A DNA stretch of 63,466 bases, filler included, from Reticulomyxa filosa (Eukaryota > Protista > Foraminifera): NCBI GenBank assembly GCA_000512085.1. It is 25 parts of 25 records of this genome, joined end to end, with 100 filler letters (N's around TTAATTAATTAA, not from the genome) between each part and the next. Parts side by side here need not be neighbours in the genome. Positions count along the whole stretch, not along the records: positions 30,077 to 37,328 come from ASPP01011083.1; 24 more parts are not named here. One strand, given 5' to 3'. Every line of letters begins with the position of its first letter. The stretch's first letter is position 1. Under the pieces are notes generated by a model. It saw only the letters and a list, made by a program, of their open reading frames with translations, did not search any database and was not told the origin of the DNA. The position numbers and the translations under genes are program-made. Below are positions 98-36,856 of this stretch, piece by piece.

Positions 98-2830
98 TTA
101 ATGCATCTTCAAACACGCATCGCACTCCATTATTTGACCATAGCTACATATCAGACCATGATCCTTCAACAGCGCATACGTATTATCATTGTCCATATGT
201 GGAAATAAATTATTCAATAAATGCCAAATTTCATCCAATAGCATTTGCATTTCGCTGTCATTGGGATTGCAATTTCCCTTTTTCATTGCGTCCACGACTT
301 CAACGTATTTTTGCAGAGCCACAATGATGACACCCAAGACATGGATTCTCCCAATAGCTGTGTAATACAATAATTATTGATACACAACATTTGCAAGACT
401 ACCGCTCATAACCTAGTTATCTGCGGTGCGCTGTCTATGTTGTTCGTACATTTGTATTATTTGTTCGCAGTACGAAGTAATAAGTCTGTACAATATCCGC
501 CCTTTCTGTCTTCTGATTTCCAATATCAAAACAGCCACAGTGATAAAAGAGATTAATGATGCTTTCTATCGTGATGACGCTTGTTTTGTTACCTCTTTTT
601 TCAACAACATTACTGGGGCTTGTCTGAAGTTTTGACTGGAGGAGATTTCTTATTTCCATTATCCTGTTCAATTGAAATTGGGAGGGAGTGATGATGGCTC
701 TTTTTTTTTTTTTTTGATGTTTTCGCAGTTGCACTTTCGGTTTCCCTCTTGCTTTTGCGGCAATGCCCATAATTCCTTGTTCTCGACAATTTTCTCGCAA
801 GGATGTTCTTTCACTTCCCACTATCGCTAGGATTGGAAGAGTGATCAGCACTAGCAGTAGACGGCTCATTAAGACGTTACCACTGTTTGATCAATACTTT
901 TTGTAGATGTGGAGTCATTGTTTTGTGGAGTTGTAGCTGCAGGCATAGTGTCGCCAGATGGATGCTCCCCACTTTTGTGATTCCGTGGATTTGATTAAAT
1001 AATCTCTTTTTTTTTTTTTAAGAGCTTTTTTGGATCCAAAAGAAATACTTGAAGTACCGCTTTTTATGTTCACTACTGGCTTGACTATTTTCTTGCTGCT
1101 TACTTTCATTGATTGCTTTTGCTCGGTGCCAGAAGCATTGGTTGATGGATCAGATGTAATTGCTTGTCCAAAAATGGAATATGCAAAGTTACAAACAGCT
1201 TTCATCTCCACAGTTGCATCAATAAAATATTTGTCTTGATTTTTTTTTTTAAAGATAATAACCTTTACTCTTTGTAATTGTGATGGCAAGTAATCAGGCT
1301 CGGCTTTAATTATTATGAAACACGCAGCTATAAATTATGTATTTATAGTTGAAGCATATATTCTTTGATACGATTTGGTCGATCGAAAAGTCAAGAGATG
1401 AATAGATTACTAACTAGAGGCAATCGTTTCCAGTAACAAAATCCACACAATGAGTAGAGGCAAATAACATTTCACGACAATTCGAAATGCGCTTTTCAAT
1501 ATCAAATGAGTGATTGTTCCATTGATTTTTTAAAATTCATTGATTATCATGATCATGTCCAATTCGCTTGTCTTGAGTAATCCCACAAACCTTTTTTCCA
1601 AAAATTCCTTGAATAAAAGCAACTTGACAAATAATTGCTGCGTTTGTTGTTGGAATTTGTAATCTTCACTGAGTAATATTTCCAAATCTGTCAACTACAA
1701 GCTGTGTCAATAAGTAATTGAAAAGTCTCAAATAAAGGAATAAAAAAAGAAATGATACATATATATTTTAAAAAATATATATATACAAGTGTACTCTATA
1801 GTTTTTGTGTTTGCAGTCTAGAATGAAAACTCATACCATTTATAGGCTGATCCAATCGGACAATTGGCGTGAAGTGTCATGGATAGTACAAAGTTGATCA
1901 TTGCCAATCTATTGCTACTTTCACAGCGAAGGGAGCGTTGGTTTGCCGAATTTCAATGTTTCACGAATTTGCAAGTTTTCATGTGCTCCTTGTACCGGCA
2001 CTTTCAAATCTTTCAATGTTTGCAGAAATTGAGCGTCGTTAGAATGTTTTTGGTGGACAGTGGCTCTTGCAGTCGGTGTCAATAATTCTGTTTTCCTAAC
2101 CATATCGTTCATCTGCTTCGTTGTTTTTTTTCCACTGCTTTTGGTATTTGATTTAGTCACCAATGTATATATACATATATATGTATATATCAAACACACA
2201 AACATGTTGGTATTTGTCCACGATTTGCTCAAAGATAATCTCCAATTGGGTCGTTATTAATTCACGTCGTTTAACCCGTGCGCTAGATTCGTGAAAACCA
2301 TCATTTGCTGTGGATTCAGTTGGCTTTTTTTCTGACAAACAAATCAACAGAGTTCCCATGCATAGCTCATATCCATGTTCAAGCCATTGATTTTCTTCAA
2401 ACAAAAAAATATATACATATACAAAGTAAGATATCTTTGACACTAAGAAATGCATACAAACATTAGATAAGACAAAGGATTGTCAGTGAATTAAACGACA
2501 GATGATGTCCTACACTGTGCCTCATTCAATGATAATAAAAGCATTCGAATGTGTTTTGTGATTTCTTCTTCGAACTTGGCTGTTGAATTCATCTTTTGTG
2601 TTGAAATTGAGCAGTGGTACTGTCCTACTCATTGTCGGTAAAGGAATGAAGAATCCACAGACGAAAATGCTTATTGCTGGACGGACAAGATTGAATGCTT
2701 TAATGTATATATTTTCATTTCCGCTAATCTTGATTGAGAAATAGTCCAATCACTGCCAATCAATTCATACAATATGCCATCAGAGTTATAACACGATTGC
2801 GCTGCATCTGTCGATTATTGTCTTTATTAT
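98..2830 (-). pseudogene. Degenerate multi-exon gene of unknown family
   Basis: Coding-like minus-strand segments (e.g. ELIGSDWTISQSRLAEMKIYTLKHSILSVQQ*AFSSV..., ENQWLEHGYELCMGTLL) separated by TA-rich introns and broken by TAA/TGA stops. Confidence 0.45.
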
Positions 2831-3096
2831 TTTAATTGTAGCTGGCGATATGTTGAAAAATATCACAAAAAATAAAAATTACTTAACTACTGATATCCCG
2901 AGCGGGATATAATCTTTTCTTCAAATTAAAAAATAAATAATAATATCTTATTCTTTTCTTTTTTCTTTTATTTTTTTTTACTTGAAACTTATTCTTTTTT
3001 TTTTTCTTTTTCCATATATATATTTTTTCTTTCATTTCCTTTTTCTTTTATCTTTTTTATTGTGCCATTTTTTCTTATTTGTCTTCTCCCTTTTTT

Positions 3097-3196
3097 NNNN
3101 NNNNNNNNNNNNNNNNNNNNNNNNNNNNNNNNNNNNNNNNTTAATTAATTAANNNNNNNNNNNNNNNNNNNNNNNNNNNNNNNNNNNNNNNNNNNN
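3097..3196. other. Artificial contig spacer (44N-TTAATTAATTAA-44N), first of 24
   Basis: Identical 100-nt spacer with stops in all six frames. Other copies start at 5438, 8099, 11341, 16967, 19644, 22121, 26506, 29977, 37329, 38612, 39904, 41092, 42367, 44263, 46326, 47719, 48819, 52591, 56878, 57978, 59717, 61096, 62258. Confidence 0.99.
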
Positions 3197-4936
3197 CAAT
3201 CTGATCATTTAGACTCACATTGAAATGGATAATGTTTCAAACACAATCTTTTTCATGTCTTGTCGTGGCGCAAGGTATGGCTTGAATTAATTTGGATTGA
3301 GCAATTAATACAATTTCATCCTCGCGATTAACATAAATTGCAAATTGCAATTTTTTAACATCTTTGCAACTGCTGCTCGGCAAGCTGGACCATTCAATTA
3401 CCGACTTTCCATCTTCGCAAAACGAAGATAGGATTTAATCACTGGAAACGCCGGTAATGTTCGTGAAGTGATGTTTTCATTCATTGCTTTGGTTTTTGAT
3501 TTGAGACATTCCCTTTCCACCATCTCGTGGATCTTTGGACCCATGGGATTGATCACATTTTTCAAATTGGTCGGATCACGAGTGCCGACAGCAGGAGTGG
3601 ATGAATCGTTTGCAGTACTGCCAGCGTTATCGTCTAAGACTGCGCTGACACTGAACGGAGTGGCTCCGTGTTTCGCAAAATGTAGCGGGGTGTCGATAAT
3701 GCCGTTGCCCATAGCGGATGGATTGCGACTCTTTTTTTTGGGATTCGCTAGTAATGGGGGGGGCGGGGGCCCTTCGTAAACCCGCAAATAATACTGCTAG
3801 GCTCAAATTAATCTTTTTAGGTAGATTGATGCAAATGCTCTTCTTCAGTGCGAAGACACCAGGAATGGGTGGTAGTCCGACGAGTTCGGTTTTACAAGTG
3901 GTTTGGGCGTCTCAGGTTTGTTTGAAATTGCAGATGGTTTGTTGGTATTGACATTGACATTGACATTGACATTGACATTGACGTTGATATTAACATTGAT
4001 ATTAGCATTAATGTTGACATTGACACTAGCATTGATATTAGTATTGATATTAATATTGACATTGGAAGAGACAAGTGAAAAAAGAGAAATATCTTTCTTT
4101 GTTGAACTTTGCTCTTCCACACTTTTAGAAGATACAGGTGTTGCAGTGTGCTCACTCACTTTTGGTATCTCCTTTGCTATTTTTTTTGTTGTCATTGTCA
4201 TTGCCATTGTCGTTGTGGTTGTTGCTGGTATCGATTCCAGTGCCAGTGTAGCTGCAGTCATCGCCGACGGATCGATTTGTACTTCATTTTTGTTACCTGC
4301 ATTAGCATTGATGCTATCATTGTCATTCCTCACCTTTTCTTGCTCATTTGAAGGAAAGACATTGTTGTTGATAACGATATTGTTATTGTTATGTTATTGT
4401 TATTAGTATTAACATTGTTATGATTTGAAAAAGTGTATTTTTTGTATGATTTAGCATAAAATCCTGGAATTGACGAATCCTGATTAAGAGGTCCCTTGTT
4501 TCTTTTTTATATGTTCTGTTTTCGTGGATAATTGCATTTAAATGGAACGATTCGTATTCACTCAATTGATCGTTACAAACGGTGAACTGTGCGACCAGAC
4601 TTCTCGATTGGAAAAGCAACTTATGCTTTGACTTTTGGAGCCAACGGTCCATTACATCTCCAATTTCCTTGGCCAAGACCAAGACCAAGACCAAGACCAT
4701 GCCACAAACGTTTTTTAATTTTTTCAACCATATCATTGCCAGCAATTCGATACAATAGCAAATTCAATTGTTTGTTCCTCCTCTTGTCCGTTCAATCACA
4801 ACAGATTTTTGATCTTTGTTTGAAGGATCGGAACACCGTACTTTGACGAGTGTCCTCCATACTGGACTGCTTTTTATCTTGCAAATAGATTCATATCTTC
4901 CTTTTTTATTTTAAATAGATTTCGAGCATGTACACG

Positions 4937-31436: not shown

Positions 31437-34400
31437 ATGACAACAAAAAAAGCAGCATCAACAGTACCAATGCAACGCCTCCTTTTTACGCAGTTGGTTG
31501 AGAATGGTGAAGGAGCCACAATTTCACGATATAACCTTTATTGTCGGAGAGGGCAAAGATCAACAAACAATAAGTGCAAATAAAGGACTATTAGCGATCC
31601 ATTGTCCAGTCTTTGAGGCGATGTTTAACTCACCAATGATCGAATCTACCGGTACTTAATGGACACACACACACATACACGTATACACACATGTATACTC
31701 GAAATTGTTTGGTAATGTGTGTTGTTGTCTGAATCGTAGCCAATAGCCAGGTAGCACTGCCTGAAGTCGACCCGGTAGTGTTTCGAACAATGTTACATTG
31801 GATGGTGAGTGATCAACTGCGAGTTCATAGCATCACGTATTTGCAGCCATTGATACAACTCGCAGATTATTACCAAATCAAGCCATTGGTGAAAACGGGT
31901 TGCTCTTTTCTGAAATCGAACACCATTTCAATCTATGTTATCCACGATGAGTCCCTTCTCAATCACCACAGCACTGACTTGGGATTGGGAGACCACAACT
32001 TGAGAAATGTGTCTTTGCGCGTTCGAATTTTGAATAATTCCACCATCGCGGATGCCAGAGCAGCCATTGCACAATACTTGGGTATTTCTATTTCTATTTT
32101 TATTTTATTTTTTGTTTTGTTTTGTTTTGTCCATGACACAAACAACATATATTTTTAATCTTGCAATTGATAGCACAATTAATCAAACATTGCAAAAAAA
32201 AAAAAAAAAAAAAAAAAAAAGGGGTAAAAAAAAGAAAATATGCAGTTATGGAGAGTAACGCCTCGTAAAAATGGAACGGTCCGACCGAATCGATACTTGG
32301 AAGATGACAATGTACACTCTTCGCTGAAGACCGAGGCGATGGGTCCTCTGGACAACTTCTATTCGCATCCTCCGATGGGAAATGAAGATATTGCGTTTGT
32401 GGACGACCACTTCGACAATGCCAGCAACGGCGAGGAACACGAGGTGGACGAATTGGAGGAGGGCGAAATCAATGATAACGACAATGGTAGTGACAACGAC
32501 AATGACAATGACAATGACAATGTCAATGACGAAACTAGCAACGAAGATGAAGAAGAAGAAGATGGAAATCAGTTTGGACAGGAAGAAGAAGAAGAAGAAG
32601 AGGAGGAAGAGGAAGATATCGAAATGGAACCCAATTTAATCCTCCAATCTTCACCTGACGACACTGCCGAGTTGGAGGCATATAGTTCGGACGAACAGCC
32701 CCAAGCACAGACGCAAGCACAAGTACAAGCACAAACACAAGCACAAGCACAAACACAAACACAAACACAAGCACAAGCGCAAGCACAAGTACAAATACCA
32801 TCACAGCCACAAGTGCAAGTACAACCTATTCCTCCTGCACTTGCATCCGTCCAACCACAAAACATTGGCGGTGCTGTGGGACAAAATGCACTGAACAACG
32901 AAGCGCCACTCAATGCAAATCAAAATAACAATATACACAACGGCGGCAGCTTGGCAAACTTACCCATATCTATGGGCAATGTGTGGAATCCAAATTACAG
33001 CACTGATAGTCTTCATCAAAACGGAAGTAGTGATTCCATTCAAAACAAGTACTTCGTATCTGGTGTGCATTGCATTATTTAATTTATATTTAAAAAATAA
33101 TAATAATGACAATAATGTCCAAGTGTCAAATTTGAAACGCAAGGAAAATAATTTTTTTTTTTCCTTGTCTTTGATTGCAGGTTGGCATAAACATGGCCAC
33201 AAAGCACCATATCTTGCTGATGACAGCTCTGCTGAAGGTCTGTGGGAAGAAGAAGCAGATCAATTTATATTGCATGGCATATCTCCTCCTCCTCCTCCTC
33301 CTCTATTTGAATCATCCAAATCCGTGAAACATCGAGGCATTTACAATGGCGATGGAACCAATTCGCATAGTTCCAATAGCTATAGTCGTCCACAAAAACA
33401 AAAAAGGAGCAATGCGGAGTACACCTCTTCACTAACGGGAATGTATCATCACAAACGAAGAAAATTAAATTCGGACATTAAAAAAGTTGAATGGAAGCAT
33501 TTTACTGGACCCAACCCAACTAAATGTATTTATGCTAGAGCTGTTGGATATGGTTATGGATTACAAGGGCCATCGAATAAACGTGAAAAGTTTTTTTTTT
33601 ATTTAAAAGAAAAAAAAGACAACACAAATTCTTTTTATTTAGTCTTTAACAATGAAGATTCACTCAAATTGTGTCCATATGTTGTGATTTCTACTACTCG
33701 GATGGTCAATTGACATAGACGTCTACGCTTTGAAGGTCTGAAATTCGGTGTCGACAATAACAAAAACGCCAAGGAAAAAAGCAAAGATCGCGAAAAAGAC
33801 AAAAGCTGTCCAAAACCCTTAGATGTTGATGAAAGATCACTCTTGGGAATTGATCAAAGGCTCGACAATAAATCTGAAAAACTGGATGGTTGGGAAGAAA
33901 AAAAAGACCAAAGAGAAAAAAAGGAGTTGTAACTCAATTTTTTTTTTTTTTTTTTTTTTTTTGCACAGTAATCAAAAACAGAAAAAAATATAAATATGTA
34001 TTTGCACTTATACTAACAAAAAGAAGAAGACAAAAGTGACGAGAAGACAACTAAATGGGATAGTCGATGTGGTCTTAACGAGGACAATATAACAATTCCC
34101 AGCTGCATCCAACGTAAAAAAGACAACAACAGTGTTTTACTGTTTTTGAAGTACTTTGATGTGTATCACCAATCCCTAAGTGTTGTCGGGAGTGTCATCA
34201 TTGCAAAAGATGCTTTGATTGTGCATTTGGCACAATTCATACGCATTGTTGCAAATTGGAGCAGTGAACGCGAAATTATATTGTGGGAAGAAGAAGATTG
34301 TGATAATGGAAAAATCCAAGCTTTGGAAGAAAGCAAACAGATTTCTGATTGTCAATTAGTTGATGGTGATATTGTTGTTTTCCAAGAAAAATCATCTTTG

Positions 34401-34535
34401 TTGCCTTTAATGCATTTGCCTGATGCAAAGGTATGCACATTTCATCTTTTCTCTTCAATTGCCAAACATGACTTGTTTTCTAAATAGGCTTTTCTCAAGT
34501 CCTTTGCAAAACCAAAGCAACAAAATGGTCCTTAA
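31437..34535 (+). CDS. BTB/POZ domain fused to USP7-like UBL1-UBL2 (ICP0-binding-type) domains
   Basis: BTB: FHDITFIVG..ISANKGLLAIHCPVFEAMF..LPEVDPVVFRTMLHW..LADYYQI. UBL1: ISIYVIHD..HHSTDL..STIAD..QLWRVTPRKNGTVRP. UBL2: VLLFLKYFD..ILWEE..QLVDGDIVVFQ..LPDAKAF. About seven exons. Homopolymer frameshifts and a TGA at 33711 are unresolved. Confidence 0.78.
32701..32795 (+). repeat. CAAGCA/CAAACA hexamer repeat encoding (QA/QT)n
   Basis: Directly visible inside the BTB-UBL gene linker. Confidence 0.9.
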
Positions 34536-34807: not shown

Positions 34808-36856
34808 ATGGCAACTGCAGCAAAAGAACCACTATTGTCAGAACCACCGAGTGACAGCAACATTGTTGTAACAAATATCCCTGAAAATGAGCCAATTGTG
34901 TCTGACAGCGAAGACCAGAAGAGTCTGGTCAGCAAACAAAAAGTGTTAGAACATCTGCAATTGCTAGAAGAAGTGTATTCAACGACCGTGCAGATTATAC
35001 TTGTTGACTTTGCATGGGCAAATGCAGCAATAACCTCCTCCGCCATATTGTATAGCATAAAACGAAATCCATTGGACAACTATGCAGGAGCTTGGATTTA
35101 TTTTGGTATTTCGTGTGCATGTGCAATATTGTTTGGATTTTTGCCCAGAGCTTGCCAAAATGTCGGATTTGTATCACTGCACAAAAAAGTGGACTCTGTT
35201 CATGTATCATTACAAAACACGAAAGCAAATGAGCCAGATTTAACAAACTCGATGTCCGTCTACTTTTTTGTCACTATCCCTGTTTGTACAAAAGACAAGG
35301 GATTCAAAAACGATCGAATTAAAAGTTGTGAATTTTGTGCGCTTAAAAAAAAAAAAAGAGAGACAGATAAGAAGTCATTAACGAGTAGAAACTCGCGACG
35401 TGTGATAATTAAAGCCTTGGAAGCAACAGGAGCACATACTGACGAAGTGACACGCAATTTAGTGACATTGACAATTGCAGTGTTTGGATTAATTGTCGCG
35501 TTTTCGTTAAGCAATTTGACACAAATGACAGTAGAAAAAGGATTCAAGAGCAAGGACGATGAGAGTTTTTCTTTGGGGATGCTATGGACTTATGCAGTGC
35601 TCATGTTTCTTGCAGGTTCCTTTTTTTTTTTTTTTTGGAAAGGCCATTTTCAGTCGTTAAGTTTGACTTTTTTTTATATTGACATCGGCGGGGGGGGGGG
35701 GAACACAAAAGGTATTTTTAGCATCACCAAATTATCCAAGTACGTGGAAGATGCAAACGGTGAAGAATTAACCAAGGCTGTGGATCAACCGGAATATTTA
35801 GAATTACGCAATGATTTGTTGACTTTGTCTCATAGCATGCGCTGCTTTCGCTTGTATTCTGTTGCTGTTGCACTGTGCATGGCGTGGGCTATTCGCGATG
35901 CGATGAGCTATACTATTGTTCGTATATTCTACGGGACGTATCAACGAAGAGAAGGCAATCGTAGGGCAATGGTTGCGTTGTGGATTTATGTTTTATTGCT
36001 GAGTTCGATTGTTGCTTGGGTTAATATGAGGCTTGAAAAGAAAGGCTATGTTTCACAGCAAAAATTAGATTTGACAAAGTTTTCTCGGCGCGAAACTCAA
36101 TTGATTGCATACATGACTTTCAATGTCTTGCAAACTGTCATTGGTATGCATAAATATATACACGTTTTTTTTCTAATTTTTTAGTAAAATATGATAACAT
36201 TTTTGAAATAGGCTTGGCAATATACGATGCAATCATTGCTTCTTGTGAACACGGTAGAACAAATGACCTCCGCTTGTCAGTATATTGGGCAGTGGTTGTT
36301 GCTTGTATTACGACAAGTGTTATTGGGACATTTTACTTGAAGAAACGGAATCTTGAAAGTAATTCTTCAACTGAAGAAACAGAAGCACAGCAAACACATT
36401 CTTCTCAGATCACAAGTAAGCGCAAAGAATATGGCAAAAAATGGTTGGAATTATGGGTCAGCTCGCTTGGTATTGCTGGATCCTTTGCTGGTGCTGATGC
36501 TGTCACATTTACTTGGGTAGTTCTTTTTGGCAGCGACTACGACCCTAGTTTTGTATTATGTTCGTTTGCTCATTTCGATGGATGAAAAAAAACAAAATAC
36601 ATTAAATATAACATTAGGTTCCCCTAATGGTGCGAACAACAGTGAGGTGCTCAGTTTATGGCTTTCTGTGTTTATTTCATATTTGGTGAGCGCACTCATC
36701 ATCACTTACCTTTCTAAATCAATGGATGCGTTCAAAGAAAAACGAAAAAATTTTGCCGACAGCTTGATCGCTGATCAAAATCAACAAAATACTGACCAAT
36801 CTCCAAACGAACAAAACACTGATCAACCTTCAAACGAGCAATCTCAGTCTAAATAA
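34808..36856 (+). CDS. 569-aa multi-pass membrane protein with five tandem two-TM repeats (DUF5654/MscL-like)
   Basis: Exons 34808-35253, 35359-35615, 35712-36143, 36212-36547, 36618-36856 sum to 1710 nt with GT..AG introns. Five TM hairpins carry G/A-xxx-A-x-A-xx-D/N-A first helices. Confidence 0.8.

What the first reader, a model, noticed from the sequence alone, without database searches (positions are those of the whole stretch)
34808..36856. Five tandem DUF5654/MscL-like units in one chain: candidate single-chain pseudo-pentameric mechanosensitive channel
Seen after splicing (569 aa): five helical hairpins whose first helices align: STTVQIILVDFAWANAAI; NLVTLTIAVFGLIVAFSLSNLT; FRLYSVAVALCMAWAIRDAM; AYMTFNVLQTVIGLAIYDAII; WLELWVSSLGIAGSFAGADAV. 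Each is followed by a loop and a W-x-Y/V second helix (GAWIYF, MLWTYA, ALWIYV, VYWAVV, SLWLSV), and units are joined by polar linkers. From memory this resembles prokaryotic DUF5654 (L..AFGLVAALAWNDAI...YA) and MscL TM1 (DLAVGVIIGAAFxxIV). Established: MscL is a pentamer of 2-TM subunits. Inference: exactly five fused, diverged subunits would build an asymmetric MscL-like pore, a plausible osmotic valve for a wall-less protist. The first two introns (105 and 96 nt) are in-frame and stop-free, so ab initio models would hide the repeat.
Basis: partly seen in the sequence, partly recalled or inferred. Interest (0 to 1): 0.85.

Follow-up and report, generated by a model that had tools for sequence, protein, structure and literature searches.

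The report
Five fused DUF5654 membrane hairpins
A gene of the naked foraminiferan Reticulomyxa filosa encodes a membrane protein made of five old, diverged copies of a two-helix hairpin (DUF5654) otherwise known as a small stand-alone protein of archaea and giant viruses. This hints that the hairpin works in fives, but nothing tested links it to the MscL pressure-valve channel.

Summary
Two environmental relatives run without gaps across the junctions of introns 2, 3 and 4. The public annotation RFI_15159 (Reticulomyxa filosa) keeps introns 1 and 2 as coding and mis-splices units 4 and 5.

The DUF5654 resemblance is real. Unit 2 reaches Pfam's gathering score, and units 2 and 3 of a distant relative also hit. 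All 13 units from three organisms align in one register with one invariant Trp at the start of the second helix. Leave-one-unit-out HMMs recover every unit class against decoys that keep the hydropathy pattern. Units 1 and 4 are the weakest. A relative only about 25% identical also has exactly five units in the same order.

The MscL link is not supported. No unit hits the MscL model, E. coli MscL does not hit DUF5654, hhalign gives 0.4% probability, and fold searches return only generic helical hairpins.

A closed five-fold ring with a pore remains inference. The joined protein could not be folded here, and the partial AlphaFold models have low confidence.

Verdict: a new architecture of a known family whose function is unknown. 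Interest is moderate.

The parts
34808..35253 (+). Exon 1: acidic N-terminal tail and unit 1 (unit 34940-35167; first helix 34982-35047; second helix 35087-35149; hallmark Trp codon 35093-35095)
   Evidence: Unit 1 is the most diverged: leave-one-out HMM 52/2000; hhalign P 0.0014 over the second helix only.
35254..35358 (+). Intron 1 (105 nt, GT..AG, in frame and stop-free, contains an A13 run), in the unit 1/unit 2 linker
   Evidence: There is no direct RNA evidence. L001 has an intron in the equivalent linker. Annotation RFI_15159 keeps it as coding.
35359..35615 (+). Exon 2: linker and most of unit 2 (unit 35405-35746; first helix 35453-35521; Trp codon 35585-35587)
   Evidence: Pfam DUF5654 E 4.5e-5, 23.8 bits, equal to the cut-off; 24.5 bits when trimmed.
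35616..35711 (+). Intron 2 (96 nt, GT..AG, in frame and stop-free, with T and G homopolymer runs), inside the second helix of unit 2
   Evidence: Removing it gives a gap-free alignment to the L001 relative. RFI_15159 keeps it as coding.
35712..36143 (+). Exon 3: end of unit 2, all of unit 3 (35795-36040; helices 35843-35908 and 35966-36022; Trp 35981-35983), and the first half of the first helix of unit 4
   Evidence: The AlphaFold model of unit 3 is a hairpin: helix 7-54, loop, helix 62-91, pLDDT 77.5. Leave-one-out HMM 0/2000.
36144..36211 (+). Intron 3 (68 nt, 18% GC), splitting the first helix of unit 4
   Evidence: The junction is confirmed by the uninterrupted relative L002/P0002.
36212..36547 (+). 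Exon 4: rest of unit 4 (unit 36056-36348; Trp 36286-36288), linker, and first helix of unit 5 (36442-36528)
   Evidence: A contig of run X1 covers 36231-36490.
36548..36617 (+). Intron 4 (70 nt, 24% GC), in the hairpin loop of unit 5
   Evidence: The junction is confirmed by a gap-free alignment to L002.
36618..36856 (+). Exon 5: second helix of unit 5 (36647-36712; Trp 36659-36661), Gln/Asn-rich C-terminal tail, and stop

Best explanation
Shown: this is a spliced nuclear gene of Reticulomyxa filosa. It encodes a membrane protein of about 569 aa built from five tandem, anciently diverged helical hairpins of the DUF5654 (PF18898) type. Each hairpin has a long, fairly polar first helix that usually carries an Asp/Asn-Ala motif, a short turn, and a very hydrophobic second helix that starts with an invariant Trp. 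Polar, Lys/Arg-rich linkers of 25-65 residues join the units. The five units and their order are kept in a relative only about 25% identical, and each position keeps its own identity across relatives.

Inferred topology: both ends and all linkers are cytoplasmic, and the hairpin turns face outside.

Inferred mechanism: the chain is a fused, now asymmetric version of the homo-oligomer that single-hairpin DUF5654 proteins of archaea and giant viruses presumably form. The five hairpins pack side by side into one closed bundle. The polar first helices sit inside and the hydrophobic, Trp-anchored second helices face the lipid. This would make a pore or channel whose permeant and gating stimulus are unknown. 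It is not a detectable relative of MscL.
For: - Organism and annotation.
- Gene model and ten helices. Junctions are supported by two relatives found in an exhaustive search of 1.84 billion representatives.
- DUF5654: Pfam hits at or above the gathering score for unit 2 of the window and for units 2 and 3 of P0003. It is the only Pfam family hit by more than one of the 11 units. The three nearest ESM-Atlas clusters to P0003 unit 2 are all DUF5654, mostly Nucleocytoviricota. The preprint 10.64898/2026.05.28.728509 reports an ultra-conserved Trp in PF18898 and its presence in archaea and many viruses. One Trp is invariant in all 13 units.
- Repeat statistics.
- Five units in the L001 gene.
- Topology: 29 Lys/Arg on the linker side against 11 in the hairpin turns. 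The first helices are more polar than the second (34 against 18 polar residues; mean hydropathy 1.1-1.5 against 1.4-2.3).
- Hairpin shape.
- Purifying selection: of 11 differences in the contigs of run X1, 6 are synonymous and the 5 replacements all lie in polar linkers.
Against: - Ring closure, a pore and conductance rest on no computation or experiment.
- The three-unit AlphaFold model is poor (pLDDT 61.6, pTM 0.44). The joined five-unit protein was not folded.
- Units 1 and 4 are only weakly tied to the others by hhalign.
- Unit 1's nearest Atlas clusters are arthropod 7tm_7 fragments, not DUF5654.
- The DUF5654 scores sit close to the threshold, and transmembrane composition can inflate such scores.
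- The function and oligomeric state of DUF5654 are unknown.
- Only three family members exist, so co-variation cannot be used.
- No RNA evidence crosses any junction.
Confidence: 0.55

Rival explanations
1. The five DUF5654 hairpins are real, but the protein is not a pore. It could be a membrane scaffold, a curvature or organising protein, or a regulatory subunit, with the hairpins in an open or differently packed array.
For: - The best structural matches of the three-unit model are open tandem helical-repeat proteins (Z up to 13.4, within the background for helical repeats).
- The first helix plus its cytoplasmic extension runs 44-48 residues, longer than a bilayer.
- No channel family is hit.
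Against: - The unit number stays fixed at five across about 25% identity.
- Each unit position keeps its own identity.
- The polar first helices carry buried Asp/Asn.
- These features fit a closed assembly of fixed stoichiometry better than an open array.
Confidence: 0.27
2. One reading: a diverged single-chain homologue of the pentameric mechanosensitive channel MscL, acting as an osmotic safety valve.
For: - The analogy with MscL (a pentamer of two-helix subunits, from established knowledge) covers the number five, the predicted ends-in topology, and an inner polar and outer hydrophobic helix.
- The organism is a wall-less freshwater cell (established knowledge; identity).
Against: - No Pfam MscL hit at E up to 10 for any exon, unit or relative.
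- E. coli MscL does not hit DUF5654.
- hhalign of the unit profile against E. coli MscL gives 0.4% probability.
- The unit profile finds no MscL among PDB sequences.
- MscL is absent from the 50 best structural matches of the unit.
- The hairpin turns are short (8-19 aa), and no C-terminal helical bundle follows each unit.
Confidence: 0.05
3. There is no true repeat. This would be an ordinary ten-helix membrane protein whose helices look alike through composition, with a spurious DUF5654 hit.
For: - Most single unit pairs are not significant.
- hhalign is weak for units 1 and 4.
- The DUF5654 score sits exactly at the threshold in the window.
Against: - Block-shuffled decoys that keep the hydropathy pattern are beaten by every unit class.
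- DUF5654 is hit independently in two orthologues and in two different units.
- One register and one invariant Trp hold across all 13 units.
- U5 against U2+U3 gives P 1.9e-5.
- No transporter family or fold is matched.
Confidence: 0.06

Closest known systems
DUF5654 (Pfam PF18898): small two-helix proteins of archaea and of many viruses, notably Nucleocytoviricota
   Same: - The HMM matches at or above the gathering score for unit 2 (window) and for units 2 and 3 (P0003).
- Each unit is about 70 aa with two helices.
- A conserved Trp is present.
   Different: - Here five units are fused in one eukaryotic, intron-bearing gene.
- The units have diverged so far that only two of the five are seen by the Pfam model.
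- The Atlas clusters nearest to it are single-unit proteins of 50-100 aa.
MscL (Pfam PF01741): homopentameric large-conductance mechanosensitive channel
   Same: Analogy only: five two-helix units, predicted cytoplasmic ends, and a more polar first helix with a more hydrophobic second helix.
   Different: - No sequence or profile similarity was found.
- No preferential structural match was found.
- The external turns are short, and the linkers between units are long and polar.
RFI_15159, hypothetical protein of Reticulomyxa filosa (676 aa; the public annotation of this locus)
   Same: Same locus. It is 98-100% identical over exons 1-3.
   Different: - It keeps introns 1 and 2 as coding.
- It drops 7 residues after unit 3 and inserts 9 residues into the first helix of unit 4.
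- It replaces most of the first helix of unit 5.
- It reads past the stop codon.

Membership tests
DUF5654 (PF18898) | Match to the Pfam model at or above the gathering score (23.8 bits) | tested here: met
   - Window unit 2: 23.8 bits; 24.5 bits when trimmed.
- P0003 as a whole: 29.5 bits.
- P0003 unit 2: 25.9 bits. P0003 unit 3: 16.2 bits.
- Units 1, 4 and 5 do not hit on their own.
DUF5654 (PF18898) | Ultra-conserved Trp (reported in bioRxiv 10.64898/2026.05.28.728509) | tested here: inconclusive
   One Trp is invariant in all 13 units, at the start of the second helix. I could not see the Pfam alignment, so I could not confirm that this is the same column as the family's conserved Trp.
DUF5654 (PF18898) | Domain of about 70 residues with two membrane helices | tested here: met
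   Hydropathy. AlphaFold hairpin for unit 3, pLDDT 77.5.
DUF5654 (PF18898) | All five units are homologous to the units that hit DUF5654 | tested here: inconclusive
   - The leave-one-class-out HMM recovers every class.
- hhalign is good for U5 (P 1.9e-5) but weak for U1 (P 0.0014, 24 columns) and U4 (P 0.018).
- Atlas features for U1 point elsewhere.
MscL (PF01741) | Match to the MscL profile | tested here: not met
   No hit at E up to 10 for exons, units or relatives. As a control, E. coli MscL scores 160.8 bits.
MscL (PF01741) | Profile or structural similarity to a solved MscL | tested here: not met
   - hhalign against E. coli MscL: 0.4% probability (a single MscL sequence, so power is limited).
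- The unit profile against PDB sequences finds no MscL.
- VIA-align top 50 has no MscL (a hairpin discriminates poorly).
MscL (PF01741) | Five two-helix subunits around a central pore, opened by membrane tension | not testable with these tools
   Five units are present. Ring, pore and gating need a full-length model or an experiment. The joined protein has no reference and was not folded.
Known ten-helix transporter folds | Match to a transporter family or fold | tested here: not met
   - Only sub-threshold, scattered Pfam and NCBIfam hits appear. The Anoctamin hit (19.5 bits against a cut-off of 28) spans the translated intron 2.
- Fold searches of the three-unit model give designed helical repeats only (the model has low confidence).

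The most novel reading that the evidence does not exclude
The protein is a single-chain, pseudo-five-fold pore built from DUF5654 hairpins. It would then show that the stand-alone DUF5654 proteins of archaea and giant viruses are homopentameric pore formers. That would be a so far unrecognised, ancient channel or viroporin-like family unrelated to MscL, with a conserved asymmetric ring of Asp/Asn in the fused form.
Probability: 0.25. Interest if true: 0.75.

Novelty: new variant of a known kind. Interest (0 to 1): 0.5.

Why it matters
DUF5654 is an old family, reported as archaeal-ancestral and common in viruses, with no known function or stoichiometry. A natural fusion of exactly five units, conserved between distant relatives, is the kind of evidence that often reveals the oligomeric state of the free subunit. 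It gives a concrete hypothesis to test: a pentameric bundle, possibly a pore. It also corrects a public gene model that hides the repeat. It does not add a eukaryotic MscL.

Tried and rejected
**Searches for more relatives or for stand-alone DUF5654 sequences**
- Word-indexed protein searches with the 445-aa unspliced exon 1-3 stretch, with a unit 2/3 alignment and with P0002 found only the queries themselves. One search was a parameter error.
- tblastn against phage records gave only chance-level hits.
- As a result I could not assemble a DUF5654 alignment for a direct profile-profile test of units 1, 4 and 5.

**RNA evidence**
- One run of uncertain kind held two short contigs inside exons 1 and 4. 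No junction was covered.

**Structure**
- Foldseek and VIA-align searches of both models returned only generic helical hairpins and repeats.
- PHROGs gave nothing consistent.

**Rejected leads**
- Weak Pfam leads (Anoctamin, 8xMP, holin_5) were rejected as sub-threshold or as spanning translated intron. A paper search for 8xMP found only unrelated texts.

**Procedural notes**
I redid it with coordinates only.
- Joined step: the spliced 569-aa protein was built only inside local scripts, from window coordinates. It was used for hydropathy, unit cutting and a local tblastn against the two fetched loci. It was not sent to any search or folding tool. All database searches were done exon by exon by reference. 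The search and fold of the joined protein were left out.

Full report
**Identity and gene model**

The piece is a 7252-base contig of Reticulomyxa filosa. The unspliced exon 1-3 translation matches the NCBI protein RFI_15159 (P0001, 676 aa) at 98-100%.

The four introns run GT to AG and are 105, 96, 68 and 70 nt long. The first two introns are indeed in frame and stop-free. The public model keeps both as coding. It also drops 7 residues after unit 3, inserts 9 residues into the first helix of unit 4, replaces most of the first helix of unit 5, and reads past the stop.

I built the joined protein only inside local scripts, from coordinates. All database searches were made exon by exon by reference.

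**Relatives**

An exhaustive phmmer of the 445-aa stretch (units 1-3 plus half of unit 4) against 1.84 billion representatives found only two relatives.

- P0002 (244 aa) lies on a 951-base JGI contig, L002.
- P0003 (375 aa) lies on a 3654-base ENA contig, L001.

L002 carries units 4 and 5 without interruption and is 47% identical. It aligns without a gap across the junctions of introns 3 and 4.

L001 carries units 2-4 in one open frame and aligns without a gap across the junction of intron 2. Its unit 1 lies in a separate exon (1069-1518), after which L001 has an intron of its own in the same linker as the window's intron 1. Its unit 5 is at 2677-3354. The tail of an upstream tandem copy is at 80-769. 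So a relative only about 25% identical has the same five units in the same order.

Intron 1 of the window has no direct support, but it lies in a polar linker. The one sequencing run that holds the locus gave two short contigs within exons 1 and 4 and none across a junction. Of their 11 differences, 6 are synonymous. The 5 replacements all fall in polar linkers.

**Is the repeat real?**

Single unit pairs are mostly not significant. The exceptions are U3/U5 (z 5.7) and U4/U5 (z 3.7).

All 13 units from the three organisms align in one register. The shared layout is a polar lead-in helix, a first membrane helix that usually carries Asp/Asn-Ala, often a Gly near the turn, and one invariant Trp at the start of the second helix.

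HMMs built with one unit class left out recover that class against 2000 decoys shuffled in blocks of ten, which keeps the helix-turn-helix hydropathy pattern. The best member of each class is beaten by 0-2 decoys. The window's own U1 (52/2000) and U4 (40/2000) are the weakest.

| hhalign comparison | Probability | P | Note |
|---|---|---|---|
| U5 vs U2+U3 | 78% | 1.9e-5 | 49 columns |
| U1 vs the rest | 17% | 0.0014 | second helix only |
| U4 vs U2+U3 | 2.5% | 0.018 | expected register |

The DNA has no internal repeat. A unit tree groups the three U4 copies together. The duplications therefore predate the split of these organisms. I regard U2, U3 and U5 as solidly homologous, and U4 and U1 as probable.

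**What the unit is**

Pfam DUF5654 (PF18898) hits the window's unit 2 at E 4.5e-5 and 23.8 bits, exactly the gathering score. Trimmed, it scores 24.5 bits. P0003 scores 29.5 bits (E 7.6e-7), with unit 2 at 25.9 bits covering positions 2-68 of 71, and unit 3 at 16.2 bits. DUF5654 is the only Pfam family hit by more than one of the 11 units.

The ESM-Atlas clusters nearest to P0003 unit 2 are all DUF5654, 50-100 aa long and mostly from Nucleocytoviricota. The literature holds nothing on function. One preprint notes that PF18898 is inferred for the archaeal ancestor, has an ultra-conserved Trp, and occurs in many viruses. That agrees with the invariant Trp here, although I could not check that it is the same column.

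Unit 1 by Atlas features resembles arthropod 7tm_7 fragments instead. Pfam does not support that, so I leave it unexplained.

**MscL**

- No exon, unit or relative hits Pfam MscL at E up to 10.
- E. coli MscL (160.8 bits to its own family) has no DUF5654 cross-hit.
- hhalign of the 11-unit profile against E. coli MscL gives 0.4% probability.
- The unit profile finds no MscL among PDB sequences.

The power of the hhalign test is limited, because only one MscL sequence could be referenced. Still, no test supports homology. What remains is an analogy.

**Structure**

The three-unit stretch of P0003 folds as three long-helix, short-turn, helix hairpins, but with low confidence (pLDDT 61.6, pTM 0.44). 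The window's unit 3, folded with the 11-unit alignment, gives a hairpin of 48 and 30 residues at pLDDT 77.5.

Fold searches in PDB, BFVD and the Atlas return only generic helical hairpins and designed tandem helical repeats. None stands above background, and there is no transporter fold and no MscL. These results neither support nor refute a ring.

**Topology and likely mechanism**

Lys/Arg are enriched on the linker side (29) over the hairpin turns (11), which predicts cytoplasmic ends and linkers. The first helices are more polar than the second (34 against 18 polar residues).

The Asp of the Asp-Ala motif is kept in units 3 and 4 of all relatives. Units 1 and 2 carry Asn or Thr at that position. 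Each position therefore has its own conserved identity.

A fixed number of five, units that have become individually specialised, and polar helices that must be shielded from lipid together fit a closed pseudo-five-fold bundle best. In that bundle the first helices sit inside. It would be a fused form of a DUF5654 homo-oligomer, and plausibly a pore. This last step is inference. I put it at about one in four as a true channel, and the MscL reading at about 0.05.

**Verdict**

- The MscL part is not supported.
- The pore is untested.

This is a new architecture (a five-fold fusion) of a known family whose function is unknown. It is of moderate interest, mainly because it suggests the stoichiometry of that family and corrects a public gene model.

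Noticed in passing
window 31498-31659, 31778-32158, 32240-33082, 34146-34487 (+): Upstream on the same strand there are two exons of a BTB/POZ domain (E 3.6e-7 and 0.0017). A long acidic and Gln-rich low-complexity frame follows, then a USP7 ICP0-binding-type domain (E 4.6e-15). They may form one multi-exon gene that ends about 300 bases before the hairpin gene.
   Followed up: partly
L001 80-769 and 1069-3354: The environmental relative is tandemly duplicated. The last unit and tail of an upstream copy (about 85-90% identical to the downstream unit 5) end 300 bases before the start of the complete five-unit gene.
   Followed up: partly
L002 about 95-125: In the JGI contig the reading frame shifts by one base between the second helix of unit 3 and the linker to unit 4. 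This may be a sequencing error or a real frameshift. The contig otherwise has no introns at the window's intron 3 and 4 positions, so it may derive from RNA.
   Followed up: no
window 34940-35167 (unit 1): By protein-language-model features, the nearest Atlas clusters are arthropod gustatory/odorant receptor (7tm_7, 7tm_6) fragments at 0.87-0.94. No Pfam hit supports this. It is probably the composition of a eukaryotic two-helix fragment, but it remains unexplained.
   Followed up: no
window 34878-35090 and 36231-36490: The contigs of run X1 differ from the window by 1.9% and 3.5%. This suggests a second allele, strain or close paralogue of the gene.
   Followed up: partly
window 35345-35357, 35621-35638, 35690-35701: Long homopolymer runs (A13, T18-19, G12) sit inside introns 1 and 2. 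Such runs are prone to length errors in assemblies, so the in-frame lengths of these two introns may be accidental.
   Followed up: no
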